Positions 955 to 57,200 of a DNA stretch of 64,000 nucleotides are shown here, piece after piece. The notes under the pieces were generated by a model. It was not told where the DNA came from, searched no databases, and saw only the letters and a list, made by a program, of their open reading frames with translations. The stretch spans positions 23,994,001-24,058,000 of the forward strand of contig NC_043016.1 in assembly GCF_006345805.1 (NCBI RefSeq). Reading direction: 5' to 3'. The position numbers were made by a program, and so were the translations under genes. Every line of letters starts with the position of its first letter. Position 1 is the stretch's first letter. This DNA is from Octopus sinensis. Taxonomy: Eukaryota.

Positions 955-1915
955 TTGGATGTGTAATGTCAGTGTGTATACTTGACAAAGTGTAGGTACC
1001 TTGAGATAAATGTTGGACCTAAGAAGCATCAGATGTGGTGGGCAAGAGAGACAACTGCGCTGGTATGGTCATGTGGTGAGAATGGAGGAGGATGGCTGTG
1101 TGAAAAAGTGCCACACCCTAGTGGTTGAGGGAACCTGTGGAAGAGGTAGACCCAGGAAGACCTGGGATGAAGTGGTGAAGCACGACCTTCAAACATTAGT
1201 CCTCACTAGGGAAATGACTAGCGACTGAGACTTTTGGAAATATGCTGTGCTTGAGAAGACCCGGCAAGCCAAATGAGACCATAACCTCGTGGCCTATGCC
1301 AGAGGTGTAACCTGCCCGCTTATGCATACCATTTTCTTCCTTGAACACTAAACTCTGCTTGCGAAGACCTGTTGAGGCAAGTGAAATCAAAATCACATTT
1401 GATGACTGGCATCCATACTAGCGGGGTGCAAAGAGCACCATACGAGCGTGATTGTTGACAGAGCGGTTAATTAGCTTCTGTGCCAGTGGCACATAAAAGG
1501 CACCATTCGAGTGTGATTGTTACCAGCGACGCCTTACTGACACTTGTGCCCATGCTAGTAGGGTGCCAAGAGCACCATCTCAGCATGATCGTTGCCAGAG
1601 CAGCCGGTGGCATGTAAAAGGGCACCATTTAAGCGTGATCGTTACCAACGTCGCCTTACTGGCACCTGTGCTGGTGGCATTTGTAAAAAGATTCGAGCGA
1701 GGTCGTTGCCAGTACCACCTGACTGGCCCCTGTGCCAGTGGCACGTAAAAAGCACCCACTACACTGTCGGGGTGGTTGGCATTAGAAAGGGCATCAAGCT
1801 CTAGAATCTCTGCCAAATCAAGATTGGAGCCTGGTTCAGCCATCTGGTTCGCCAGCCCTCAATCAAAATCGTCCAACCCATGCTAGCATGGAAAGCGGAT
1901 GTTAAACGATGATGA
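955..1915 (+). mobile_element. 5'-truncated RTE-clade LINE: RT C-terminus plus 3' UTR with internal 50-70-nt tandem repeats and (GAT)n tail
   Basis: ORF 1010..1228 reads LRWYGHVVRME..GRGRPRKTW, typical of the RTE C-terminus. Repeated gcaccat..gagcgtgatcgtt.ccag units lie at about 1435-1700. Confidence 0.85.
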
Positions 1916-1936
1916 TATATATATATATATATATAT

Positions 1937-3330
1937 AATCATCATCATCATTCAACATCTATTTTCCATGTTGACATGGTTTGACAGGAACTGGTAAGGC
2001 CAGAGGTTGTACTAGGCTCCATTGTTTGTTCTGGCATGGTTCCTTTGGCTGGATGTTCCTCCTAATGCCAACCACTTCACAGAGTGTTTACTGGGTGTTT
2101 TTTTATATGAAACCAGTATGAGTGCTTTTAACACGAAACAATCACTAGTGCTCTTTAAGTGGTACCAGCACCAGAATCAATTTCCCTTTTTTCTTGGACA
2201 GCTCATTTTGAAAACAGCAGGGCTCCAGACATCTTAGTCCTTTGTTATCTCCTTCACAAGGCTCAGTGTCTTGAGATTGGCCTTCATTACTTTATCCCAT
2301 GTCTTCCCCTTCCATAAGTTCCATCCACTTTAAGTGATTGACACTTCAGTATACAACTGCCCTCATCCAAACACATCACATGACCAAACCAGTGCAGTCT
2401 TCTCTCTTGCACACTGCAGCTATTTTCTCTTAAGCCTAACTTTTCCCTCAATACATTTTGATTTTGTTGTGCATGTACACTGATGTTGCACATCAAGCAG
2501 AGCATACTAGCTTCATTCCTCTCTAGTCTTCACATTTCCTCTGCATTTAAGTCCCCATATCTCACCACCATATAGAATTGCTGTTCGTAAACATGCACCA
2601 TACAACCTTCCATTAACTCAGAGATCGAGAAATTTGGTTGCCAACAGAGGCAAAAGCATTTTGAATTTTCTCTATCCTATTCTTATTCTAGCGATTATGC
2701 TTTCTGTACATCCTCCCCCACTACTAATTAGGTCACCTAGGTAGCAGAAATTATCCACTACCTATAAAGAACTTCCGCAACATTTAAGAAAATCAATTTC
2801 CCAAGTAGTTCTTATGGCTCCTGTGCATCATCCACATACAAACACTACACTCTCTGATAACATTATTATTCTATTGCACCTCTTGTGTGTCCATAACTTG
2901 CACTGGGTACACCAAATGGAATTGTTGCCTACACCTTTCCTGCATATCAAGCTGAGCCATTTATCTAATGAGGGAAGGGTCCTGTCCATTTTCTTGCTTA
3001 CTAGACTCCTAGTCTTTGCTAAGTTAACCTTAAGGTCCTTTGATTCCAAGTTTTACTTCCACATCTGGAATTTTTATTTCTAGTTGTTATAGAATCAACC
3101 ATGAGAGCTAGATCATCAGCATATAGCAGTTCCTGGGGGAAGCCAGTCTTGAATTTTTCTGTTATGTCCTGGAGGACGATGATGAATAGGAGGGGACTGA
3201 GAACCAAACCCTGATGAATGCCTACATGCACACTAAATTCATACCTATACTCATGGTTAACTCTCACCTTACCAACAGAATCTATTCTACATGACCTGTA
3301 CAGCTTTCAAAAGCTACTCATCTGCCCCTA
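1937..3330 (-). mobile_element. Decayed RTE-clade LINE, RT domain to 3' tail
   Basis: Minus-strand ORFs contain HQGLVLSPLLF and ELLYADDLAL (RT YADD motif), LKVNLAKT, and RLHWFGHV..GRGR. Frameshifted; tail at 1937-2130. Confidence 0.88.
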
Positions 3331-43341: not shown

Positions 43342-45968
43342 TTATATATATATATATATACACACATACATATATTAGCTGGTTTTTACATGATGATCAG
43401 GTCACTGCTGCCTCCTCTTTCCAACTGCATTCAGCATGTCCAAATTAATTTAGCATTTACCTGTTTCATTTTTAAGGCTAAGACAGTTCTGCATTTTATA
43501 ATAAATAACTGTTAACCACATTTGTTTGATTTGGTCCTTGATTTAGTAATGAATTATAGTTAGTTTGTTTTTTATACAGTTTGAACATTAGTCAACTAAA
43601 GATATGAAATTGTCTTATAGTATGTTATACTAATGAAATATTTATTCAAATCTCTCCAAAAATTTGCTGATAATTTTTAATTTCACAAAAAAAAAAACCT
43701 GTGGTTAACTAAATAAAAATAAGAATTTTATTAAAAAAGTTTTTCTTAAATATTTTAAAATGTAACAGACAATAGATCATTTTTAACAAGATTAACAATT
43801 TAAATTTGGTTTGATACATATAAAGTCATTCATTTTGATCATAAAAAAATCATAATTAATTTGTAACTGAATCAAAATTAAAGCTATTTATGTATTTATT
43901 ATCTAATGCTCCATGTTTGTTTTTAATTATTAATTGTTGTTTTACCAATGTTTTCAGGTGAAAATCTTAGTCCCTAATAGTACTGCAGGAATGATAATTG
44001 GTAAAGGTGGCATTTATATAAAACAAATTAAGGAGGAAAGTGGAGCGTATGTGCAGATATCTCAAAAGTCAAAAGAAACAAATTTGCCAGAACGCTGTGT
44101 AACAGTTGCAGGTGAGTGCAGCCTTGTTTTAGTGTGTTTATTGTATTTTGAATTATTGTTTGAAACTGAATTTGTGACTAGGAAACAAGTTCTCTTGTGT
44201 AGTATTATTTTTAATTTTGTGCATGTATTATGAAATTGTTTGACATTTTGAAAGCTGTGTTTTGCTGTAGTGTTTTGAATTAAAACATTGTGAACTTGAT
44301 GATTTGTTGTCTTGGGCAGATTTTTACTAGTGACCATCCATCTATAATAAAGTTGGACTCTTTTCTTTTTATAAATTACATTGCATTTGTTATTTAGTTG
44401 CCATAAGCCTATTTATTATATTTATATTGCAAATGACTTTGGTATATTTATCACTAAAATTTATAAACCATTCTATATTTAAATACTTAATAGGGTGTTG
44501 GGGGGTAAATTATGAATTTCTAAGAAATTTGTTTATCTGTTCCGGACTCTGCATTTGTTGCTACTGAATATTTCTTGTCATCTTGACTTAGAAAAACAGC
44601 TCCTAAATATTTTTATTAAATGTTTAGTATGTAGCCCTATATTATCTATTTTAGTAACTTGGCTGAAATGTTAATACATTCATTGTTTAGAAAATTATTG
44701 TAAATAAGGTAGTTTTTGTTTAATACTTTTTCTTAAATTTTAGTTAGTCTAAACTGTTTTTTTTTTCCATTTTTTTTTTCCTTCTCAATCTTTGTTTTGT
44801 AGGTGATGTTGAGTCCAACAGAAGAGCTGTTGACATGATATTACAGAAGATTGTTGAAGATCCTCAAAGTGGAAGCTGTCCAAATATCAGTTATGCAGAT
44901 TACACAGGACCAGTGGCCAGTGCTAATCCTACCGGGTCCCCTTTCGCTAACACGGACTATATACAAAACAGAAGTACAGAGATAGGATTAGCTAATAATA
45001 ACTTTGGTGCTTTTGGTTTTGGTTTTAATGGAAATGCCTTTGGAAACAATATAGGAGCTAGCATGACGAATCTGAACTTGAATGCAGCTTTAAGTGGTGG
45101 CACTAGTAATAGCATTAACAGTACAGCTTTGGATAACATAAAAATAACTCTGCGAGGAAATGGATTTTCAGATCAAGCAACCGAAGAAATAAGTACTGCC
45201 ATGAACACTTTAGCTAGCTATGGTATATTAGCTAGTATGGGTTTAGGAATGGGCAGTTTGAATAATTTGGCAAACTTAGGAACTGGAAGCGGTCTAGGAA
45301 CAGGACTGAATCTTAATTCATCTGGCTTGCAAGGCTCTAGCATGATGTCAAGTAGTACAACTTCAACCACAAGTGTGAGCAGCCCTTTCTTTAACACTAC
45401 CACCAGTACTAACAGTGCTGGTAGCCTTTTTGGTCCAGTTGGCAGTGGGTCATCCGGATTAGGAAGTTCAGGCTCCACTGGAGCCAACTCTAGTCTTTTC
45501 AGTAATTCCTCTCCTAGTATTGGCAACGAAAGATATGGGGGAAGTCCAATGCTTAATGATTCATTTGGCAATGCTGCTAATTATCCCAGCAATCCTGGGT
45601 TCACTGGAACTCCAAGCATAGCTGGCGACAGGTCTCCTAATGTTAATCAAAATTCTTTTGGCCTCGGAACTGGCATCTATAGCCCTGCTGATGACAAATC
45701 AGCCCCGGCAACTAAGCAAGAGATGGAGGTTCCGGAGACAATTGTTGGAGCTATCCTGGGACCTGGCGGGAAAGGCATCGTGGAAATACAACAGTTCACG
45801 GGCACCAACATTCAGATTTCAAAAAAAGGAGTCTATGTACCTGGTACCCGTAATCGTGTTGTCACCATAACTGGTACTCCTAACAACATTTCCAAAGCCC
45901 AGTTATTTATCCAGCGGCGCCTCCAGCAAGAGGAAATGAAGAGGGCTCGTCAAGCTTCTACCCGTTAG
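8041..45968 (+). CDS. Nova: Nova/pasilla-family triple-KH RNA-binding protein, spliced CDS join(8041..8158,41367..41507,42081..42226,43958..44111,44803..45968), 574 aa
   Basis: Exon lengths 118+141+146+154+1166 = 1725 nt give 575 codons with no internal stop. All introns are GT-AG, with phases 1,1,0,1. The translation has the Nova N-terminal SRKRP motif, KH1 ([18 protein letters not shown]), KH2 ([18 protein letters not shown]), the Nova-typical [28 protein letters not shown] and NTLASYG motifs, and KH3 ([34 protein letters not shown]). Confidence 0.95.
15601..15885 (+). mobile_element. tRNA-derived SINE, internally deleted
   Basis: ggttctgggttcagtc..ctgggcaagtgtcttctactatag..gtgagtggatttgg..ctggggttgatt..aatgactgaaacaa, homologous to 25143-25526. 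Confidence 0.85.
16195..16350 (+). mobile_element. Short degenerate RTE RT C-terminal fragment
   Basis: gctggtttggccatgtgatgagaa..gatagctgcataaagaagtgtcaa resembles 1050-1170 and the reverse complement of 2330-2420. Confidence 0.6.
16556..16683 (-). mobile_element. RTE/SINE 3' tail, reverse orientation
   Basis: Reverse complement of 40-190 (catcatcatc..tttccatgctggcatgggttggac..ggatgcccttcctaa). Confidence 0.8.
17388..17438 (+). CDS. Candidate 51-nt symmetric (phase 1-1) cassette exon in Nova intron 1 ([17 protein letters not shown])
   Basis: Pyrimidine-rich acceptor ctctttacttgtttatttctag, donor CAG|GTAGGT. Length is divisible by 3, there is no stop in the Nova frame, and GC is higher than the flanks. 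Confidence 0.5.
20505..20511 (+). other. Candidate 7-nt microexon (GAATATG)
   Basis: Sequence is ccctgtccttgttatag|GAATATG|gtaagta: near-consensus donor and a reasonable acceptor, flanked by YCAY motifs. Confidence 0.3.
23900..23953. repeat. 27-bp perfect tandem duplication (tcaatgctatagatattccagtaccat x2)
   Basis: Directly visible. Confidence 0.9.
24561..24925 (+). mobile_element. Degraded tRNA-derived SINE with RTE-like tail
   Basis: gtgtggttaaaaagtttgct..gttcagtcc..ggcaagtgt..tttgtgagtg..ggcaacaggaaaagcatccagc..aacccac. Confidence 0.7.
25143..25526 (+). mobile_element. Near full-length tRNA-derived SINE
   Basis: A/B-box-like 5' head (ggagtggctgtgtg..ccgggttcagt), central (AT)/(GT) microsatellite, and a 3' end aatgactgaaacaagtaaaagag. 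Several homologous copies lie in the window. Confidence 0.9.
27350..27505 (+). mobile_element. Second SINE family copy
   Basis: gagttcatatccc..tcaactttgcctttcatccttt..gactc homologous to 58011-58160. Confidence 0.7.
35635..35748 (+). CDS. Candidate 114-nt symmetric cassette exon or alternative first exon ([38 protein letters not shown])
   Basis: Strong donor AAG|GTGAGC at 35749 in phase 1. The Nova-compatible frame is open from 35598 to 35756, and the segment is a local GC/CpG island. Acceptors at 35634 (114 nt) or 35602 (146 nt) are weak to moderate. Confidence 0.42.
38203..38207 (+). other. Candidate 5-nt microexon (GTGGG)
   Basis: Sequence is gtatttttcttgtgtag|GTGGG|gtaagtc: strong acceptor and perfect GTAAGT donor. 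Confidence 0.3.
38537..38800 (+). mobile_element. Degraded tRNA-derived SINE
   Basis: cttgcttctcgaccacatg..gggttcagtcccactgtgtggcac..ggcaagtgt..gagtggattt. Confidence 0.8.
41367..41507 (+). CDS. Nova: Nova coding exon 2, first half of KH1 ([48 protein letters not shown])
   Basis: Acceptor tttttattacag|GG, donor CTG|GTAACT, 141 nt, GxxG loop (GKGG). Confidence 0.95.
42081..42226 (+). CDS. Nova: Nova coding exon 3, second half of KH1 plus linker ([49 protein letters not shown])
   Basis: Acceptor aatttccag|GG, donor CAG|[19 protein letters not shown] matches Nova KH1. Confidence 0.95.
42919..42990 (+). CDS. Candidate 72-nt phase 0-0 cassette exon between KH1 and KH2 ([24 protein letters not shown])
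   Basis: Acceptor tcattcttactttcag, donor CAG|GTCAGA. 24 codons, open in the Nova frame. Confidence 0.45.
43958..44111 (+). CDS. Nova: Nova coding exon 4, most of KH2 ([52 protein letters not shown])
   Basis: Acceptor gttttcag|GTG, donor CAG|GTGAGT. Lies inside ORF-track entry 43934..44233. Confidence 0.95.
44803..45968 (+). CDS. Nova: Nova terminal coding exon: end of KH2, long G/S/N/T-rich linker, KH3, stop TAG
   Basis: Acceptor tttgttttgtag|GT at 44802, in frame with the 377-aa ORF 44835..45968. Confidence 0.96.
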
Positions 45969-46188
45969 GGTACCCTCTCCCGCCATTTCATTGCACGGAA
46001 ATTCCCCCTTTTTCTTTCTTTTTCTTTTTTTTTCTTAAATCCTCTCTCCCTCACTCTCTCACCCATTCCTCTTTTTTTTTCTTAACTTCTCCCACTTTCA
46101 TTTAAACATTTTTATTTATTTTATTTTATATTTTTGAAATCAAATTAAACCCATCCCGAATCCTAACCATAAATATAATTCAAACAAA

Positions 46189-46190
<2 letters not shown>

Positions 46191-46237
<47 letters not shown>

Positions 46238-46449
46238 TATACATATATATATATGCACAGACACACATACACACGTGTGCGCGCATACATATTCATGCAT
46301 ATTCAAATAAGCACGCCATGTACATACATGTGTGTCTGTGTATATACGCATATAGGTGCGAGTATATATGTATGTATATACTACACTCATACACTTTTGT
46401 GTATTTGTGTGAATATGTGTGTGTGTGTGTATATATATATATGTGTATA

Positions 46450-46489
<40 letters not shown>

Positions 46490-46490
46490 A
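46191..46490. repeat. Compound (TA)n/(CA)n/(TG)n microsatellite, representative of dozens in the window (others near 8338-8440, 10018-10110, 10476-10532, 12200-12260, 12520-12600, 17458-17720, 52650-52920, 60985-61040)
   Basis: Directly visible dinucleotide runs. These generate most of the spurious [12 protein letters not shown] ORFs in the track. Confidence 0.95.
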
Positions 46491-49298
46491 AAATCATTTT
46501 CCTCTTTCCACAGCCTTGGAAATAGGAATAGAAAACTTAAATACATTGCCTCTCCAATTTCTAGATATAACAAGATGAAAGCTAACCTTTTTTTCTTTAT
46601 TTTTTCATCAAATTCATTCAGTATATAATTCATTTATAAATTAAATTTCAAATGCTCTAAATGAATCCCATACAGCCTCAGAAGTGTTTAGTATCACATG
46701 CACACATACATCCATATAAAATTACATACACACACACACACTCACATGCATATATCTTCTCAAGGTGGGGAAAATTGAAATGCCTATGTTAATGAGCTTT
46801 TTTAGTGTTACGTTTTGTGTTTATATATATAAATGTATATATGTGTATGAATGTGTTTATGTGTTTAATTGGTATTTTTTACGTCTGTTTTCCATGCTAT
46901 CATGGATTTAGATGTTCTAAATATGGATATTTTCATGAACTGTGTGACTGTGTGTGTGCCTTGTGCATTGTGTGTATATATTTGTATATGTTTGTGTGTG
47001 TATATATATGTGTATATGTATATACATACATACATACATAAATGTGCACACAGATTTTTTTGATTATATCTTTTGAGTTTTTATTTATATTAATTTAATG
47101 CTTTGAAAATATTTGTAAAAAATCAAAAATTGAAAAAATTGAAAAAAATCTATTTAAAATGTTACACTCATCGTATTCATATTCTAGAAATAAGATACAT
47201 TCTAATCTGGATATCTAATCATCAGTATGTTCTAAAATCGTTTAAGAACGTTTTGGTTTTATTTATTTATTTTTTTTTCAAATGGAAATCATAACTTTAA
47301 TGTTCAGGTCAAATTTGTTAGCTAATTGAGGCATTTATTTCTATATTTTTTAAATGTTTCTAGATTTTACATAATTTATTCAATAGCTATCTGATTGCCA
47401 TATTCTCACTACAGAAAATCATCAATTTTTGTCTGATTGTCATAAACATGTTTGTGGCTGAGTTTAATGTATTCTGATAAATCTTACATCTTATAGTGAA
47501 AAGGTTGGCTTAATTTGAATTTCTGGTAGTTGGAAAGACAAAGTGACTATTTCTGTTATTTTCTTTTTGATTCACAGAGGCTTCCCTGAATATTATGAAA
47601 ATGGAATGTGGTATTGAAATATCTGTTGCAGTCTCTTCAAGCAGCTTTAAAAACTGTTTTATTGAACCAAAATAGAATTAACTTTTCAGTGCTTAGGTCA
47701 AAATTTGTCTTTCACTGATACTTCTCATCAAGTATCAAAATATGTAGGTTGGCCTAAGATGAAAAAGAAATCTTGAGCAAGAAAGATGGTTATACCTGAT
47801 TATAACATTATACATTCATTATTGTTTCATTTTGCAAAAAGAAAAATAACAAAAAAAGACAAAAAAAAGAAAAAAAATATGAAGATAAAATGTAAAAAAA
47901 AAAAATCATTCTCTTTTTATTTTCCTAATAACCTATGTTTATTATATCAATGATTTATTAACTCGTATTTCAGAGCACCTATGTAATGAGAAATCAAAAT
48001 CATCTTAATTCTATTAAAGCAATTTTTCACCCTATAGATTCCATAAAATCTCCACATATCTATCTCTAAACTCTATTTATACCTATTTATATCCATGTAT
48101 TTATATTGGTTATATCAACCTTTTTCCTTGCATAAATAACTTCTAATTTCTAAACATCTCATTATTTGATTTATATTTTCCTCATTAAAATGTTTTAGTC
48201 TCTAAATTTCAGTTCAATTGTTATAGAATTTAATATTAAAATATATATTTATATATAGTATGTATATATATATGTATATATATATGCATACGTATATATC
48301 TTGTTGCAATGTTACAGTGATTCAGTGATTATAGTTTTCAATACTGTTGCCCTGTTTTGTAATGTACTAGTTTCTAGTAGCTCCACACATACACACACAC
48401 AAAATAAAACCCATCCTTTAATGTTTGTAATTCATTTGCAGAATTTAAAATATTTACTCCATAAAGTACTTTAAGTTACACATGCTTCTAAATAGCTCTA
48501 ATTTAAATCTTGTCTGATGAGAGAAACTTTACTCTATAATAGTCTTGTACTTATATTAGATATTGAAAATATTTTAAGTATTTCTAAAAAATTTTAAGCA
48601 CATTTTGTGTGTGTGTTAGTCTCTGTCTTTTAGCAAGGTGTCTCATTTCATTAGGGTTTTAGGTGAATCCTTTAGCTTAGGTTACATAGTTAATTTTCTC
48701 TCTATTATTTTGCTATCAATATTTATTCGTGAGTGTAATCTTCACAGCATTTTATTTAACAATTGTATATGAAATGATTAATAGTTAGTCATGTGTCAGT
48801 AGATTTATACTCTTCCTTTTCATGTTGCATACATATTTTTGGAGAATTTAATTAAGGAAACAATGTAACAAAAGGCATTTTAATGCAATTATCTTCAGGT
48901 GTTTTCTTCTGAATCTTAATATTTTAATCTTAAAAGTAGTTATGAATACACTATTTTCACAGCTTTCTAAATATGCAATCAATTTTGAACTTTCCATTTA
49001 TTTGTGCAATTACGTCATCATGATTGTACTATATTAATACTATTTTATCTTCTAAACCATGACAATATTTCATTGAAACTATGAGTATATGATATTTGGT
49101 TTCATTTAATTAGATAGTTTGATGTTACACCCCATTCTATCAGTATATTTTACTAAGGCTAATCACTGAACTATCTAGTTGTTACATTTTTTGCATGTTA
49201 GCACATTTTATTTAATTAGAAATTACATTTTGCAAAGTGAACTCTATGCAAATATTTTGCCTTAATATTGGAAATGGTTAAGATATATAGTCCTAGTC

Positions 49299-49329
<31 letters not shown>

Positions 49330-50189
49330 GATTTGCTAATGCAACAATTTAATGTAAAATTTCATTTTTTGAGGTATGGCTTGAAAATATCTAAAGTGAA
49401 AGAGGAAAGCAAAACATTTACAATACTAAACACTTCAAAGGCAATTATTAATTTTCCATCTATTTATTTTAAATTGCAGTGTCATTGTTTGAATCATAGA
49501 GGCTTTGTGTTATCACCTAAGGGATATGTATATCATTTGTATATACATACACATGCATATTCTACATATACATACATACATTCACACACATACATTTGTA
49601 CCCCTCTTTCATTTTTCCTATCCCTTTAAAATCTGATATATTTTTTAAATTATCATTTCATTATTTGATTATTTTGTTTTAGGGGGCATTTACAGTTCCA
49701 AGAATGGCTGCACCTTTTTCTTCCATTTTTATGGTCAGCAGAGATATCTGGAATTATAAAGAATGATGCCTTCTGCTCATACCAACTTACAATGTGCCAG
49801 ATATTTTTTATTACACAGCAAAGATGATGTACATGTTTGCATTGTATATTTAAATTTTGCAATAATATAGTTATTCATGTGATATAATGAAAATTTTCAT
49901 AAGTCTCTCTGCTAATCAGAATCAAGTAGAAAGGCTTCATAACTAGTCACAATAACTTTACTCTATACTACATAAGCACCAATAAATTGTCAAGATATGA
50001 CTACTATACATCATTTTCACTCTCCCTCTAAAAAAAAAACTAAAACTAAATAGATCTATTTAAAATGCTAACAACATTTTGTCATAGTCTGTTAAAATTT
50101 TCCAATATTTACTTTTATATATGTATATATATATGTATTCATGCACACATATGCACATATATACACACACACACATACACAATGAAGCA

Positions 50190-50233
<44 letters not shown>

Positions 50234-52875
50234 TATCAGGGTGTGTGTGTATATATATGTTTGTGTGTGTGTGTGTGTAGTTTAAAGGTGAGCAATATCT
50301 CCTCATGCTGAAAGCCGTTTGAAGCTGGCATGGTCATAACAGAAAAAGCAATTGTTAAGTTTGCACATTTTGTTGGTCAATAATATATTTTGATATATTG
50401 CTTTTACCATTTGTTTACATGCCTGCTAATAGCAACAGCTATGCTATGAGTGCATAACGCATATTGGAAATTTATTCTTCCATGTTAACACTCATTTGAT
50501 GGTTCCTTCCAATCTTTTTATATTTCTGTGCTCACTGTTCACATTTAGTTTGTATTTGCAAAATTAATCTTCAATTTTAATCTGAAGAAAAAAAATCACA
50601 CAACATAGAAAAATGATTGATTCAGCTTTCACTTTATTTATGTGTGTGTGTATGTTTGTGTGTATATGTGTTTTGTGTATATTATATATACACACATACA
50701 TGCGCACACACATGTACATACCCATGCATACACATGAAGGTAGTATCATTTGATATAGTGATTTAAGGTACAAGTTGAAAAAAAAACTTATTTGCACCTG
50801 ACATATTTATCATTAGAAATTTCATTATATGCTATATAAATGATTATACGAAATTGGAATTGTTTATTTGAATATATAGTGCAAAAATGCTGTGTTTTTG
50901 CTATGTAATTAAAACATGTTGTGCTCAGAAATAAAAGCGGCCATTTTTTTAGGAAAGCTTTGTGAATCATACATCTGTGCATGAGTTCCAAATTGTGGAA
51001 AGACAAGAAAATGGATTTTCTCTTAATGCTGCGGTGTCACCCATGTGTGTTTGTGTGACTAATCAACCAATCACTTCCAGGTGTGTCCACTCTACTTTGC
51101 CCTCTTCTATATTCTCACAAAAGGAAAAAGTGGCATACTTACAGGGCTGTGCATCTTCGTTTTTCACTAATAGTCATACCAGAATTGGTTGCATAATGTA
51201 CATTAAAACACAAGCCATTAGTCCTTGCATTGCTGTATATAATTCACCCACAAACTCTGGCTGTAGCCATCACTCTCATGTGCCCATCTGTGACAATGCA
51301 CGGATCACACTAGGAAATGTAACATGGGCACTCATTAAATTTTTTTTTATAGTCAAGTTAACACACTAAAATATGACATTGCTCAGGCATTTGAGGAAAG
51401 TTAAAAGTTGTGAGGTCAGTGAAATATTATTTGTATTGATGATGATTATCATTCCAAGGTTATATAATTTTTCATTTTTCCTCTTCAGACAGATGGCTTA
51501 TGTAATGTCATAATATATTTTCTAGCTGTTGGATCGACATTGAAGAAGAAACCTTTATATATTATATATTGTTTTTTTTTGGTTTTTTTTCCCCCCTCCC
51601 CGTTAGAAAAATGTCAGCTTGAACATTATCTTCGATATTTGTTCAACTGCTTTACCTTGTATTTCTTATCTGTCACATTCAGTTTGTTACTGTTATTGTA
51701 TAGTATAAATTTTTTAGGGGGTCTTGGGAAAAAAAAATTCTGCAAAATCTGTCCTATCCAAAGGAAGTAATTTTTTTTATTTAGTTTCATTTCCTTTTTC
51801 TTGTACTGCCTTAAAGGCTTAAATTATTTCATGGCAGTCATTTTTTTTTCTTTTATCCCCTCTGCCCCTCCTTTTTTGGTTGATTAGATTAACAAGCTTT
51901 TGTTTGGTAAATTGTGAGAGAAAGCAATGAAATGGAGACTTTTTTTTCTTTTTTTCTTCTCTCTATGACTTATTGAGGCTATTACTTCTGTACCACTTCG
52001 CCATAAAATTTCCATTCATGCAGGAAGAATAATTGTTCATATTGATTATTCTTCCATCCCTTCAATCTGCCACACTATTACAAAACAATCGTAACTATTT
52101 AGCCACTACAATATTGCAATGACATATTTATTTAGGAATTTGTTGTATTCATTTTCTCCTGCAAAAAATAAACTAGCAGCTTTTTAGCCATTCTTTATTT
52201 CCATTCTCCTCCCCGCTTCTAACACTCTTTTACCCAATATTCACTTTTTCTGTTTCAATTCCAGTTACACTCATTTACTGGTTCCAGCAAGAATGTTGTG
52301 GCCATGCTGGTTACTCTTTTATCTTAGATATCAAGTTAATATTTAAATGCTATTAGCATTAGAAAGTATGTCCTCTTCATCTATAATATCTTTAGATAAT
52401 GGCCTTTTAGTTTGTTTTTCTTTTCATTTGATATATTGATATTTTACTGATGCCAAAATGGCAGAATTACTTATCTCCTTTCCCAGTTTCTTCCTAATAT
52501 TTAGATGCGAAGTGCCATCTGTATTTATATGGTTTTTTCTTCACATTTTCTTCTTTACCCCTTTATTTTATTTTCAAGTAGAATGTTTGATTGCCGCAAT
52601 AGTTATCTATGAAAATTAATAAATCCCCACAGTCTTTTATTGTTTATACACATGCATATATATATATATATATTATATATATATATATATATATGTGTGT
52701 GTGGTGGTGTGTGTTTATATATATCTGTATATAATTTACACACACACTTTAGTGTAACAGTAAGCTGCCACAATAGTTGTCTCATTACCGTGAGTGATAG
52801 ATGAACTTGATTACATGTTCTTAATTCAACTGTTTGTGTATATGTGTGAATATATAACATACATGTGTAACATGT

Positions 52876-52923
<48 letters not shown>

Positions 52924-52974
52924 GAAATGTTGCAAAAGGAAAATAGAAACTATATGTGGCAATGTGAGGGGAAA

Positions 52975-53390
52975 GTAAAGAGGAAAATAAATGAAAATGA
53001 ACATTGGAAATCAAAAAAAGTCGAAGCTTTTTTTATGAAAAGTAATGAAAGATATATACAATTGGATGAACTGAGGTAGGAATAAAAGTAATAGGTCATT
53101 ATTGGGAATTGTTGGAGATTTAAAAGTATAACCGTTTCATAAATTACTAATCATTGCTTTGTATACAGGTATTCATTGCTTTGAATGCACGTCCATTCTA
53201 AGTAATGATTAGTAATTTATGAAAGTTATGCTTTTAAATCTCTTTAACAATTCACAATGATTTTTATTACTTTTATTCTTACCTCAGTTCATTTAATTGT
53301 ATATATCTTTTGTTATTTTTCATAAAAAAGGCATGACTCTTTTTTTTTTTATTTCCAGTGTGCATTTTCGCTTATTTTTCTTCTTGCTTA
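52975..53390 (+). repeat. Long imperfect inverted repeat / predicted RNA fold-back (core arms 53026-53159 and 53200-53332, 40-nt loop)
   Basis: Hand alignment of the 5' arm against the reverse complement of the 3' arm shows about 130 nt of near identity, for example GATATATACAATT..ATGAACTGAGGTA.GAATAAAAGTAATA and TTTCATAAATTACTAATCATT. Weaker homology extends outward. Confidence 0.9.
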
Positions 53391-53803
53391 CCACTATACA
53401 CACACACACACACACATATAAACACATGCACTGCAATTATATTCAACATTTTGAGCTATGGGAGTAATCATTCTGCAATACTTCTATTTTCATTGGCCTC
53501 TTATTTTCTTTTTAAGCATTTCTTTAAGAAAATTATAAAATCATAAGATTAGTTTCTGCTTTAAAATACCATTTTTCTGCACATATCCTGTTCTCATCAC
53601 TTGAATGTTTTTCTAAAGAAAATAATGGTCACATAAACATAATCCCATGCAACACTCATGCATACATACAAACATACACATGCATTTGTTCATTCACTCA
53701 TTCAAATGCATATTTATATTCTAATCAGATACATAAATGCATACAGATTACACATGCATCCTTATTTTTTCCTCAGACATATACAGTTATATATGCATTT
53801 GCT

Positions 53804-53837
<34 letters not shown>

Positions 53838-54170
53838 TCGTCATTACTAGCTTCATACATTTATCCACAGACACTCTTGACTTATAAGAGTTTATTTAAC
53901 ATTCTTGCAATCTCTCTGCAGGGAATATTCATACCTTAAAATTAAGGTAATCTATTGTGATATATAGAGGCATAATGTTTAGGGCTATAACGGGTACTTG
54001 TCTACTCGATGAGCCTAGCTGTTGTCCAACCAAGAATAGATTGTTCTATCAATATCTTGCATTAATAACATTCTGTACATGCATATGTGTGCATACACAT
54101 ACTTTTGTGTGTCACACTCTTATGTTCACAAATTAATATAAAATATTAGTTTGTGAATACACACACATAA

Positions 54171-54203
<33 letters not shown>

Positions 54204-57200
54204 TTCAGTTTTATACATAAGAATATTAGAATATATTATTTCCAGACACCCAGATTTAAAAATCTTGTAATTTTAGTATTTCCTGGATATCTCACATCAA
54301 TTATTTTCCAGTAAGCATGTTGAAAATTTTCATGCAATATATGTATATAGATCAAAAGCAAGGTCATATTCTGATATCCTTATCTTCAGAGCAATTTAAA
54401 GCTTCTGTGATATTGAAAGTTCTTCAGGCAGTGCATATTTCAAGCATTTAAAAGTGGTCTTATAAATTAGTTATTTGACTAAAACAAAGAGCTTGGCTGG
54501 GCCAATAAACTATTTGGTACAATTTGAAGATATGACAAGTTGCTGATTGATTCATTTTTATTACATCAAAAGGACTTCATGTTAATCTAGTTGACTCAAG
54601 TATAACATTTTCTTCACAGTTAAACTGTTTTCTGATGTTGGTGTTTTGCGTGAAATTGAATTGTACTAATTTAAACGAATGTTTATTTCAATATTCACTG
54701 TTATATCATATGTAAAGTTTCAAAGTTCAAGGGTGGATAGTTGTGAGTGCTTATAAATTTGTTAGCTTGTTATTTTATTGCTAATATGATAATAAAATAA
54801 GACTTTACCAATGGATGTTTTTTTTTTTTATTTTGTTTGTACTCTTATCTCTATCTACCTTTCTCCCCATTCCTCTTGGTTGGACAATAGTGATTTTGGA
54901 TTCTAGTGTTTGCTGGGGCTTGTAGTGTCCTTTGTTCATTGGCTGTGTCAAATACTTGTAGCCCTATATTGGTCACTCAGGGAAAGAACAGTCATTTGGA
55001 ATGAAAAGTTTATTCACTTGCAGTTGTAATCATTGATTGTTCCAAAGAGTTTTAGACTCAAGAAGTTTATATAAATATATCATTCATAACCATTTATTTC
55101 AATTAAGTTATTAAATACATGTATTATATAACAATGCTACATAATCAACCTGATTAGTTTGTTTTATTGCAATCAGCAGATACATTAAAATTTACTTTAC
55201 AATTATATAATTATACTAGTTATTGAAAAAATACTTATTAGATTGTCATAGTTTAGTAAAAAAAAAAAAAATTCCATTATTAGCATTATATTTAATACAT
55301 AACCATTTTAAAATGTATATTAAAACATTTAAACTATTAAATTCAATTTACTTATATTCCTAATTGAAAAATAACTCATAGATTTACTTTCTAGCATTTG
55401 CTTCTATATCAAATTATCTAATCAGGCTCGTATGTGTGTATGTATTGGTATGGTTGCCAAGTCGGATGTCTATTTCCTAAAGAGCAAATTACAATAGAAA
55501 TTATCTCCCCTTCTTTCTTGAGTAGTGCTTTAGTTAAAAACGAAATGAGGTTATTCTGTTGAAGGCATTCACTCTAGAACTGAAAGGATATTGTCTGACT
55601 GTCAGTCTAATAAATTACTATTCTGATTCCATTCCTGCTTGGATAAAAATAATTTAGTTTCTTTCAATATTTACTGATGCAATAGGTCTTGAAATTTTTC
55701 GTTGTTTTTAGCATTTTAGGGTTTTTTCTTTTTTTTTCTAACTGCAATATCTTAATGTCTTCAACTTTTCAGTTCATAGTAGTGTATATATAATAGGCTG
55801 CTGAATGTATAGTAGATGTGTGCATTTACCTTATATTTGAATCTGCCTCTTCACATGAATGAATGTATTACAATCCATCAAAGACCTAATTTTGGCCAAC
55901 ACATTATGTACATGTGCACACATTCTTGTACCAGTCCATTGTTGCTCATTGAAAGTTGAATAATTTATGTGTGTACATGTGCATATATACATAATGCATA
56001 ATATGTGATATTAATAGAAAGAATAATTATTTCTATTACAAATTTATACTTTAGCATACTTTAGAAGTAGATTTTTGCTTGGCTTCTTTAAAATTATTGT
56101 AATTCTTCATGGAAATACAATAGATTGATTTAGGAAGAACCTAAACAGCAAGTATTTTTAAGTGTTTCATGTCATCAAATTTTGCATTTCTCAAACACTT
56201 CAAACAAGAGGTTTGGGAGTCTGGTATTGTTGGTGAAAATGGCAAAAGTATTTCAAATACTGGAGAAAAATATCATTAGCATAATTTACAAAAAGTTTCT
56301 GACTGGAGTTACAATGAGGATGCTTCTGATGTGACTTGCAGTATCTTAATACAGAATATTCATTGTGGTAGTATCTTAGTAAGAAGACTGGCTGTTTTGT
56401 TGGTCTAATGATAAATGAAAAGAAACAACACAATGTACTTGAAAATTTAGTAAAGCATTGTACTATCTATGCTTCTTGGGGCACTGTTGAGGATTAAGAA
56501 TTTGTAATATATCTGATACTTGTCAGGTTGGCAAGAGCCCATTTCTCTTTACCAATTCAAGTTTTCAAAAATGGTAAATTATTTTTATGGTGCTACCTGC
56601 CTCTTAGAACAATACATTACTCTGTAGTAGTTATTGCCGGGTGGATTAGACCATTGAGAATTAGTGTCTTTGCTCAACATAATTCAGTATGTCAGTAGCC
56701 TGAGCACTATGCCAATAAGAGCAGTTGTCTTTCTCATTTCAGCACATGATTACAATAATTCTGGAGATTCCATTTGTTTTGTTTTGATAAGCATTAATCA
56801 CGCTTACCATTAAGACAAAAATGTCATCTGAAACTTAATTTCTTAACAGTTCATAATGGATTTTAATATATGGCAAGAGCTAGGAAAATATTACATCTTT
56901 AGGAGTAATAAATTTTATAAAGATTAGGTGACACATTAGACCATGAACATTTTTGATCTCTTTGATTTGTTTTCCTCAACGTTTGACAAAAGGAAACTCT
57001 TGTAAAGATAGTTTTTAATGCATAGCAGCTGAATTATTTCTGTTGTATGCCTCATTTGTTTTTAATTTGACTGACAGACCAATTAATTAGTATAAATCCA
57101 GTGGAACTTGCCTTTGTAGATGAAGGAAGATATATGGTCCTGCCTTATGGAATAGATATTGGTTTATATGAGAGATTCCTTTTTTTCATTTCAATTACTG

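What the first reader, a model, noticed from the sequence alone, without database searches (positions are those of the whole stretch)
52975..53390. Long fold-back downstream of Nova whose arm differences are almost all G-U wobbles on the sense strand
Hand alignment of core arms 53026-53159 and 53200-53332 shows 13 substitutions plus four small bulges. Twelve substitutions are transitions, and all twelve give G-U pairs in the + strand RNA with none giving A-C; the other is a G-A mismatch. Neutral decay of a DNA inverted repeat should give G-U and A-C about equally, so 12 of 12 has probability about 1/4096. This points to selection on an RNA duplex in the Nova-sense direction. Weaker pairing extends to about 52975/53390, and flanking (TG)n/(CA)n tracts (about 52870 and 53400) could extend it further. 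The roughly 130-190-bp wobble-rich stem with a 40-nt loop resembles ADAR hyper-editing substrates or Drosophila-type hairpin RNAs that yield endo-siRNAs. Cephalopods are established heavy A-to-I editors.
Basis: partly seen in the sequence, partly recalled or inferred. Interest (0 to 1): 0.78.

Follow-up and report, generated by a model that had tools for sequence, protein, structure and literature searches.

The report
Wobble-rich fold-back downstream of octopus Nova-1
A 608-bp fold-back inserted in the octopus lineage lies in the conserved region downstream of the Nova-1 gene, and its arm differences are almost all G-U wobbles on the gene's sense strand; this suggests, but does not prove, that it is kept as a long double-stranded RNA.

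Summary
Machine alignment of arms 52967-53159 and 53200-53395 gives 162 Watson-Crick pairs, 17 G·U, 2 A·C and 8 transversion mismatches. The + strand folds at -218 kcal/mol, the - strand at -164.5.

The window is Octopus sinensis. Nova-1 is on the + strand and its stop codon ends at 45968.

The fold-back is larger than reported, 52842-53449. It is present in O. vulgaris and absent from Argonauta hians, where the missing segment matches the repeat ends. It is therefore a discrete insertion, or a deletion in Argonauta. It sits inside a ~9 kb block much better conserved than the introns, probably a long 3'UTR.

Fifteen control inverted repeats pool to 126 G·U : 89 A·C, so the target is an outlier (p = 0.007). 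The core has 3 disruptive mismatches where 13 are expected from the outer arms.

Best reading: an inserted fold-back whose loop-proximal ~135 bp is constrained as sense-strand dsRNA, probably bound and edited by ADAR. The endo-siRNA reading is disfavoured by published work.

Not testable here: transcription, editing, genome copy number, and covariation. The two Octopus genomes differ by only 0.39%.

The parts
52842..52900 (+). Outer left arm of the fold-back: unique sequence followed by (TG)n and the start of (TA)n. Pairs with 53395-53449.
   Evidence: Local alignment; repeat I2; MFE. Mismatches here are 1 G·U, 2 A·C, 2 transversions.
52901..52966 (+). Segment present only in the left arm: (TA)n plus about 45 nt of unique sequence, with no partner in the right arm. 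Forms a side branch in the fold.
52967..53025 (+). Middle left arm, with a neutral-looking mismatch spectrum (5 G·U, 2 A·C, 5 transversions in 58 pairs). Pairs with 53333-53395.
53026..53159 (+). Core left arm: 131 aligned pairs with 12 G·U, 0 A·C and 3 transversion mismatches. Candidate constrained dsRNA.
53160..53199 (+). 40-nt terminal loop containing a small 7-bp internal stem.
   Evidence: MFE structure.
53200..53332 (+). Core right arm. It includes 53287, which is G in O. sinensis and A in O. vulgaris, opposite C53071.
53333..53394 (+). Middle right arm, including a T11 run that forms a 5-nt bulge against A7 in the left arm.
53395..53449 (+). Outer right arm: (CA)n followed by unique sequence ending ...TTCAACAT.
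44802..45968 (+). Last coding exon of Nova-1 (KH3 domain). The stop codon ends at 45968.
   Evidence: tblastn; ORF; 100% identity to O. sinensis Nova-1.
47578..47589 (+). Alternative terminal coding micro-exon (R-L-P-stop) of a Nova-1 isoform lacking KH3. Shows that sense transcription reaches at least 47.6 kb.
45969..55100 (+). Downstream block conserved with Argonauta, the putative long 3'UTR. It is 82% alignable outside the 51.5-53.5 kb island that holds the fold-back.

Best explanation
A ~608-bp fold-back (52842-53449) entered the region downstream of Nova-1 in the Octopus lineage after its split from Argonauta. It is either a palindromic or MITE-like element, or an inverted duplication. 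It lies inside a ~9 kb conserved block that is most likely the long Nova-1 3'UTR, so it would be transcribed in the sense direction. In that RNA it folds into a nearly continuous duplex of ~190 bp. Since insertion the arms have diverged. In the loop-proximal ~135 bp, changes that break pairing in the + strand RNA (A·C and transversion mismatches) have been removed, while changes that keep a G·U pair were tolerated. The result is a DNA palindrome broken by G·T mismatches (longest pure Watson-Crick run 21 bp) that still forms a 70-bp uninterrupted RNA helix. The most likely role is a binding platform for double-stranded-RNA-binding proteins on the Nova-1 mRNA, above all ADAR (hyper-editing). Effects on mRNA retention, localisation or stability are possible. 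Shown: the structure, the strand-specific wobble excess, its excess over controls, the lineage-specific presence, and the conserved context. Inferred: transcription through the element, selection as the cause, and ADAR or other dsRNA-binding proteins as the readers.
For: 17 G·U against 2 A·C overall and 12:0 in the core, robust to scoring scheme. The + strand is 53 kcal/mol more stable than the - strand. Controls pool to 126:89:243 (G·U:A·C:transversion), with Fisher p = 0.007, and p = 5e-5 for core G·U against disruptive mismatches. Internal clock: the core has 3 disruptive mismatches against 13.0 expected from the outer and middle zones of the same repeat (Poisson p = 0.001), while G·U is 12 against 7.1 expected. 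Background base composition implies only about a 1.2-fold combined transition asymmetry (T/C 2.50 against A/G 2.08). The G·U lean of the controls does not follow local G+T skew. Context: Nova-1 is on the + strand and an alternative coding micro-exon lies at 47.58 kb. The sequence is 82% alignable with Argonauta at 45969-51547 and 53501-55100, against 4% in the long intron and 9% beyond 55.1 kb. O. vulgaris annotates no other gene within 10 kb downstream, apart from a small + strand ORF at about 51.0-51.3 kb. Literature: octopus editing is concentrated in intron and 3'UTR hairpins, and 3'UTR length is the standout feature of its transcriptome (PMC9699675); octopus tops hyper-editing among the 19 species compared (PMC5625713).
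Against: There is no direct evidence of transcription, editing or protein binding. There is no covariation: O. sinensis and O. vulgaris differ by 0.39%, with one stem substitution, and that one creates an A·C mismatch in O. vulgaris. The sample is small (19 transitions). The control repeats are over-dispersed: one shows 7:0 with 10 transversions and another 30:15, so an unknown strand-biased process may exist. The outer zone used as a clock is partly microsatellite. Long fold-backs are very common in octopus (4.4e-3 of loci, PMC5625713) and most are presumably neutral. Genome copy number is unknown. The element lies in the least conserved 2 kb of the downstream block.
Confidence: 0.45

Rival explanations
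1. A neutral fold-back transposon (MITE-like) or inverted duplication with no RNA-level function. The G·U excess would come from chance plus a modest strand-asymmetric mutation process, for example transcription-associated excess of A>G and C>T on the non-template strand.
For: The element is a discrete unit absent from Argonauta, with boundaries at the repeat ends. Fold-backs are exceptionally common in octopus (PMC5625713). The sense strand has T>A skew across the whole window. The controls lean towards G·U (0.586, p = 0.014) and two of them are individually skewed. The outer and middle zones look neutral. The one substitution separating the two Octopus species makes an A·C mismatch.
Against: Even with the empirical G·U fraction of 0.586, P(17 or more of 19) = 0.004. 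A twofold asymmetry would still give p of about 0.02, while composition implies only about 1.2-fold. This reading does not explain why transversion mismatches are also depleted in the core relative to the outer arms. The G·U lean of the controls does not follow strand skew. No second copy was found in 64 kb plus 139 kb of cephalopod DNA, though that is a weak constraint.
Confidence: 0.3
2. A directional A>G footprint. Either the G·U pairs are genomic 'hard-wiring' of adenosines that ADAR edits in the duplex (A>G is nearly neutral or favoured where the RNA already reads as I), or the element was copied through a hyper-edited RNA intermediate. In both cases the wobbles mimic I·U pairs.
For: The wobble Gs lie on both arms (10 left, 7 right), as expected for promiscuous editing of a duplex. 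Their 5' neighbours are U 8, A 6, G 2, C 1, against a background of A 43%, U 29%, G 16%, C 12%; this goes in the direction of the ADAR preference. G·U in the core is somewhat above the neutral expectation (12 against 7.1, p = 0.057). The single interspecies stem change is G/A opposite C, the best ADAR context.
Against: The neighbour preference is not significant at n = 17, and there is no 3' G enrichment. There is no poly(A) tail or other retroposition mark at the element ends. The middle zone's 20% balanced divergence argues for an old repeat rather than a young hyper-mutated one. The ancestral state of the G·U sites cannot be determined, because Argonauta lacks the element.
Confidence: 0.12
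3. A Drosophila-type hairpin RNA (hpRNA) gene diced into endo-siRNAs that silence a target gene.
For: It is a long near-perfect hairpin with sense-strand G·U pairs, which resembles hpRNA loci.
Against: Cephalopods and other lophotrochozoans are reported to lack a siRNA-class Argonaute and detectable endo-siRNAs (PMC8915122). The arms show no complementarity to the Nova exons, to three paralogue loci or to anything else in the DNA held. The arms are AT-rich non-coding sequence with no Pfam hit.
Confidence: 0.04
4. A DNA-level cause: hairpins extrude preferentially on one DNA strand and G·T-specific mismatch repair acts on them, removing the + strand A·C sites (which are G·T on the - strand) without any RNA function.
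For: This would give strand-specific loss of A·C. Over-dispersion among the control fold-backs hints at non-selective strand-biased processes.
Against: It does not predict the depletion of transversion mismatches seen in the core. It needs an unshown strand bias in extrusion. No such process has been described, to my knowledge.
Confidence: 0.05

Closest known systems
Long intramolecular dsRNA hairpins in 3'UTRs and introns that ADARs hyper-edit (inverted Alu pairs in human; edited 3'UTR hairpins in C. elegans and human brain)
   Same: A duplex of more than 100 bp formed by an inverted repeat inside a transcription unit, in the non-coding part of a neuronal gene. Octopus editing is reported to concentrate in exactly such intron and 3'UTR hairpins (PMC9699675) and octopus leads in hyper-editing (PMC5625713).
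   Different: Inverted Alu pairs are two independent insertions with a long spacer and evolve neutrally or are selected against. In human only one long, highly paired dsRNA was found in a 3'UTR, and conserved dsRNAs are short and weak, about -42 kcal/mol on average (PMC11838218). Here a single compact fold-back of -218 kcal/mol shows a mismatch spectrum suggesting that the duplex is preserved. Editing itself was not shown.
Palindromic transposons that form dsRNA on their own (the Harbinger-derived palindromic repeat of Xenopus; MITEs and fold-back elements)
   Same: One element whose two halves are inverted copies. It is present or absent as a unit between lineages and can fold without a partner copy (PMC5625713, discussion).
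   Different: Those are high-copy families with defined termini and target-site duplications. Here no second copy was seen in about 200 kb, no clear TSD was found, and the genome-wide count could not be obtained.
Drosophila hpRNA loci
   Same: Long hairpin with a short loop and wobble pairs only on the transcribed strand.
   Different: hpRNAs derive from, and target, a protein-coding gene and need Dicer-2/AGO2. No target homology was found here, and the siRNA branch is reported missing in cephalopods (PMC8915122).
Engineered G:U hairpin-RNA transgenes, in which one arm carries C>T changes so that the RNA pairs but the DNA is not a perfect palindrome (from my own knowledge, not checked here)
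   Same: Same design outcome: the DNA inverted repeat is interrupted (longest pure Watson-Crick run 21 bp) while the RNA helix stays continuous (70 bp including G·U).
   Different: That is a deliberate design for transgene stability. Here the pattern would have arisen by mutation and selection, and the wobbles are spread over both arms.

Membership tests
ADAR hyper-editing substrate (intramolecular 3'UTR/intron dsRNA) | Long, nearly perfect intramolecular duplex (tens to hundreds of bp) | tested here: met
   About 190 bp stem at -218 kcal/mol, z -23; 70-bp uninterrupted helix.
ADAR hyper-editing substrate (intramolecular 3'UTR/intron dsRNA) | Both arms lie in one transcript | tested here: inconclusive
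   Indirect evidence only: it lies on the Nova-1 sense strand inside a ~9 kb block conserved with Argonauta, an alternative coding exon sits at 47.58 kb, and no other gene is annotated nearby. No RNA data were available.
ADAR hyper-editing substrate (intramolecular 3'UTR/intron dsRNA) | Clustered A-to-G RNA-DNA differences on the sense strand | not testable with these tools
   No read data. The supplementary files of PMC9699675 that are held contain no Nova entry and no matching sequence.
Drosophila-type hpRNA / endo-siRNA locus | Organism has a siRNA-class Argonaute/Dicer branch and endo-siRNAs | tested here: not met
   Literature only: PMC8915122 reports the absence of siAgo and endo-siRNAs in lophotrochozoans, including cephalopods.
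Drosophila-type hpRNA / endo-siRNA locus | Arms homologous or complementary to a target gene | tested here: inconclusive
   No match in the window, the three Nova paralogue loci or the Argonauta locus. The whole genome could not be searched.
Drosophila-type hpRNA / endo-siRNA locus | Phased 21-22-nt small RNAs from both arms | not testable with these tools
   No small-RNA data.
MITE / fold-back transposon | Discrete presence/absence with boundaries at the terminal inverted repeats | tested here: met
   Argonauta lacks about 52.84-53.50 kb while both flanks are syntenic. The repeat ends are at 52842 and 53449.
MITE / fold-back transposon | Target-site duplication | tested here: inconclusive
   The flanks TTTGTGTAT and TTTGAGCTAT are only loosely similar. 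About 25% divergence from Argonauta blurs the empty site.
MITE / fold-back transposon | Many dispersed genomic copies | tested here: inconclusive
   No second copy in the 64-kb window or in 139 kb of other cephalopod DNA. This excludes only families of more than about 60,000 copies. The ORF-based protein search and the metagenome scan found nothing. No octopus genome search was available.
miRNA precursor or other Rfam family | Match to a curated covariance model; about 60-80-nt hairpin | tested here: not met
   No hit at gathering score in the window. Only sub-threshold, microsatellite-driven hits in 52700-53600. The stem is about three times too long.
Structured RNA under purifying selection | Pair-preserving (compensatory or wobble) substitutions across species | tested here: inconclusive
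   Only O. vulgaris carries an orthologue, at 0.39% divergence. The one stem substitution gives C:G in O. sinensis and C·A in O. vulgaris. Within the element, arm-to-arm evidence favours constraint.

The most novel reading that the evidence does not exclude
The fold-back is a lineage-specific, selectively maintained long dsRNA module in the 3'UTR of the neuronal splicing regulator Nova-1. Its G·U wobbles would be genomic stand-ins for I·U pairs: they keep the RNA helix and its dsRNA-binding proteins, break the DNA palindrome, and limit perfect duplex runs to 21 bp or less. This would tie Nova-1 mRNA fate to the ADAR/dsRNA machinery that is so active in the cephalopod nervous system.
Probability: 0.12. 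Interest if true: 0.7.

Novelty: new member of a known kind. Interest (0 to 1): 0.42.

Why it matters
Long near-perfect hairpins in mRNAs are usually treated as neutral or harmful transposon debris that ADAR has to neutralise. In human they are almost absent from 3'UTRs, and conserved dsRNAs are short and weak (PMC11838218). A ~190-bp duplex in the conserved downstream region of a master neuronal splicing factor, with a mismatch spectrum pointing to preservation of pairing on the sense strand, would be a concrete and testable case of a long dsRNA kept for a function in an animal with extreme RNA editing. The test used here (G·U against A·C against transversion mismatches between the arms, with the outer arms as an internal clock) needs only a genome. 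It could be applied genome-wide to ask how many octopus fold-backs are constrained and on which strand. If the bias proves mutational, that would itself reveal a strong strand-asymmetric process in octopus.

Tried and rejected
1. Polarising substitutions to measure strand-asymmetric mutation. O. sinensis and O. vulgaris differ at only 222 sites in 57 kb, and only 4 of those could be polarised with Argonauta, so this was useless.

2. Fishing orthologues or extra copies through spurious ORFs. A chimeric query of eight arm and flank ORFs found nothing. An exact look-up of the 133-aa ORF that overlaps the left arm found nothing. The 108-aa ORF returned only O. vulgaris.

3. Reaching O. bimaculoides. 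The P0001 cluster holds only O. sinensis isoforms with contigs. An N-terminal Nova-1 search returned no further octopod gene model. Logan contigs from another octopod (P0003) end about 300 nt past the stop codon.

4. L013 turned out to be the window itself.

5. ADAR neighbour preference at the 17 wobble Gs showed a mild 5' U excess that is not significant. A CpG origin of the wobble Ts is rejected, since only 3 of 17 are TpG.

6. A correlation between control G·U fraction and local G+T skew was not found.

7. Rfam gave no family.

8. A metagenome scan with a 26-mer shared by both arms gave 0 hits.

9. The supplementary tables of PMC9699675 held no Nova entry and no matching small-RNA sequence.

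10. A conserved poly(A) signal at the end of the conserved block: ATTAAA at 55110 lies where conservation stops but is not conserved in Argonauta, so the 3' end is not defined.

Full report
**What is there**

Bases 52967-53159 and 53200-53395 form an inverted repeat around a 40-nt loop. A local alignment of the left arm with the reverse complement of the right arm gives 162 Watson-Crick pairs. It also gives 17 positions that would be G·U in + strand RNA, 2 that would be A·C, 8 transversion mismatches and a few small bulges.

Two of those three sit next to a bulge. This matches the hand alignment apart from that bulge.

Six different scoring schemes give 14-18 G·U and 1-6 A·C. The + strand RNA folds at -218.0 kcal/mol with 22 G·U pairs. 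The - strand folds at -164.5 kcal/mol with 6. The longest helix counting G·U is 70 bp, and the longest run of pure Watson-Crick pairs is 21 bp.

The repeat is longer than reported. Through the (TG)n/(CA)n tracts and into unique sequence it reaches 52842 and 53449, and the whole 608-bp unit folds at -281 kcal/mol.

**Where it is**

The window is 100% identical to Octopus sinensis CM016878.1, positions 23,994,001-24,058,000.

Nova-1 lies on the + strand. Coding exons are at about 8.07, 41.4, 42.1 and 43.9 kb and at 44802-45968, with the stop codon ending at 45968. The stem therefore starts 7.0 kb downstream of the stop.

An alternative terminal coding micro-exon (R-L-P-stop, 47578-47589) is spliced from a GTGAG donor inside the last exon. 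It is used in annotated O. vulgaris and Argonauta isoforms, so sense transcription reaches at least 47.6 kb.

Comparison with Argonauta hians shows where conservation lies:
- 45969-51547 and 53501-55100: 82% alignable.
- The 33-kb intron: 4% alignable.
- Beyond 55.1 kb: 9% alignable.

This is the pattern of a long, conserved 3'UTR of about 9 kb, as is usual for neuronal RNA-binding-protein genes. It is inference, not proof. O. vulgaris annotates nothing else within 10 kb downstream except a small + strand ORF at about 51.0-51.3 kb.

**Origin**

O. vulgaris carries the hairpin at 99.1% identity in an independent assembly, so it is not an artefact.

Argonauta is syntenic on both sides but lacks about 52.84-53.50 kb. 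That is almost exactly the 608-bp fold-back. The element is therefore one discrete unit gained in the Octopus lineage or lost in Argonauta. The first is more likely, because the arm-to-arm divergence of about 15-20% is far below the divergence of unconstrained Octopus-Argonauta DNA.

This is how a fold-back or MITE-like transposon, or a one-step palindromic insertion, behaves.
- I found no convincing target-site duplication.
- I found no second copy in the window or in 139 kb of other cephalopod DNA.
- No ORF-based or metagenome trace of relatives turned up.
- These results exclude only very high copy numbers. A genome-wide search was not possible with these tools.

**Is the G·U excess more than chance or mutation bias?**

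Under strand-symmetric mutation, G·U and A·C arise equally often. 17 of 19 gives a two-sided p of 0.0007, and 12 of 12 gives p = 0.0005.

The sense strand does show T>A skew throughout. However, the base composition (T/C 2.50 against A/G 2.08) implies a combined transition asymmetry of only about 1.2-fold. Even a twofold asymmetry would leave p at about 0.02.

As an empirical control I scanned the window, the Argonauta locus, two O. vulgaris paralogue loci and one O. bimaculoides paralogue locus in the same way. Fifteen independent inverted repeats pool to 126 G·U, 89 A·C and 243 transversion mismatches. The results were:
- The controls lean towards G·U (0.586). Two are individually skewed: 7:0 and 30:15.
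- The lean does not follow local strand skew.
- Against this background the target is still an outlier: Fisher p = 0.007, and binomial p = 0.004 with the empirical fraction.
- It is more of an outlier when G·U is compared with all disruptive mismatches: p = 3e-4 for the full stem and 5e-5 for the core.

**An internal clock**

All parts of one inverted repeat are the same age. By zone:
- Outer (52842-52900): 1 G·U, 2 A·C, 2 transversions in 53 pairs.
- Middle (52967-53025): 5, 2, 5 in 58 pairs.
- Core (53026-53159): 12, 0, 3 in 131 pairs.

From the outer and middle rates, the core should hold 13.0 disruptive mismatches but has 3 (Poisson p = 0.001). G·U pairs are at or above expectation, 12 against 7.1.

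So in the loop-proximal ~135 bp, changes that break RNA pairing on the + strand are missing, while changes that keep a wobble accumulated at about the neutral rate. This is what purifying selection on a sense-strand duplex predicts. It argues against a young repeat hit by one-off hypermutation. One caveat: the outer zone is partly microsatellite, so the clock is rough.

**What could not be shown**

O. sinensis and O. vulgaris differ by only 0.39% in substitutions (222 in 57 kb, ts:tv 1.92). The stem holds a single difference: 53287 is G in O. sinensis, pairing with C53071, and A in O. vulgaris, giving an A·C mismatch. That is compatible with any model.

The O. bimaculoides Nova-1 locus and other octopods could not be reached. 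No RNA-seq, editing or small-RNA data for the locus were accessible, and the supplementary files held for PMC9699675 contain nothing relevant. There is no Rfam family.

**Mechanism**

The best-supported reading has confidence of about 0.45. An inserted fold-back was taken up into the long Nova-1 3'UTR, and its core is maintained as a long sense-strand dsRNA. That would make it a platform for ADAR and other dsRNA-binding proteins.

Published work fits this reading. In O. vulgaris most A-to-I editing lies in introns and 3'UTRs because hairpins are there, and 3'UTR length is the most outstanding feature of its transcriptome (PMC9699675). Octopus has the strongest hyper-editing signal and an exceptionally high density of long near-perfect fold-backs (PMC5625713).

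The endo-siRNA alternative is disfavoured. Lophotrochozoans, cephalopods included, are reported to lack a siRNA-class Argonaute and endo-siRNAs (PMC8915122), and the arms match no gene in the DNA held.

The rivals are:
- A neutral fold-back with chance plus mutational asymmetry (0.30).
- A directional A>G footprint or hard-wiring of edited sites (0.12). The 5' neighbours of the wobble Gs lean towards U, but not significantly.
- A DNA-level repair bias (0.05).
- hpRNA (0.04).

**Comparison and novelty**

The element works like the known class of long intramolecular dsRNAs in non-coding parts of mRNAs that ADARs edit, and by origin it resembles palindromic transposons. What is unusual is the hint of constraint on so long and stable a duplex. 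In human, only one long, highly paired dsRNA was found in a 3'UTR, and conserved dsRNAs average only about -42 kcal/mol (PMC11838218).

I rate it a new member of a known kind, of moderate interest. The decisive tests are cheap and are listed under next steps.

Noticed in passing
window 45374/45375 (donor) and 47578-47589 (micro-exon): An alternative terminal coding micro-exon (R-L-P-stop) is spliced from a GTGAG donor inside the last exon, giving a Nova-1 isoform without the third KH domain. It is annotated in O. vulgaris (P0060) and Argonauta (P0072), and the 60 nt around the acceptor are identical between them.
   Followed up: partly
window 45969-55100: A ~9 kb block downstream of the stop codon is 82% alignable with Argonauta, against 4% for the long intron. 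This suggests a very long conserved 3'UTR ending near 55.1 kb. ATTAAA at 55110 is not conserved in Argonauta.
   Followed up: partly
window 1000-3300: Retroelement debris: ORF 3019-3267(-) hits reverse transcriptase RVT_1 (E = 3e-7), and ORF 2828-3049(-) has a weak PHD-like hit.
   Followed up: partly
window 1-64000; L002: T>A skew on the Nova sense strand over the whole window (-0.086) and in the Argonauta locus (-0.10), against -0.03 to -0.05 in three paralogue loci. GC skew is about 0. This may be a transcription-associated asymmetry.
   Followed up: partly
L010 6550-6836; L011 2967-4357: Two other octopus fold-backs also show G·U excess (7:0 with 10 transversion mismatches; 30:15 with 31). 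G·U/A·C ratios among octopus fold-backs therefore look over-dispersed, which a genome-wide, strand-aware census could explain.
   Followed up: partly
L010 10001-11671; L011; L012: One O. vulgaris Nova/Pasilla paralogue is encoded by a single uninterrupted 1671-nt exon and looks like a retrogene. Two others span 2.7 and 8.5 kb, against about 38 kb or more for Nova-1.
   Followed up: no
L011 19200-21750: A large nested palindromic/tandem array gives many overlapping inverted-repeat alignments of 100-480 bp.
   Followed up: no
window 53287 (and 53071): The only stem substitution between O. sinensis and O. vulgaris is G/A opposite a C: C:G in O. sinensis and C·A in O. vulgaris. This is the context ADAR edits best. 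It is a single site, so anecdotal.
   Followed up: partly
window 46222-46380: A microsatellite-based near-palindrome lies just downstream of the stop codon (4 G·U, 5 A·C). Logan contigs from another octopod break in this region.
   Followed up: no
window 51014-51340 (L001 52923-53249): The O. vulgaris annotation calls a 108-aa + strand 'gene' with no Pfam domain inside the putative 3'UTR. It is probably an ORF called on a 3'UTR transcript fragment.
   Followed up: partly
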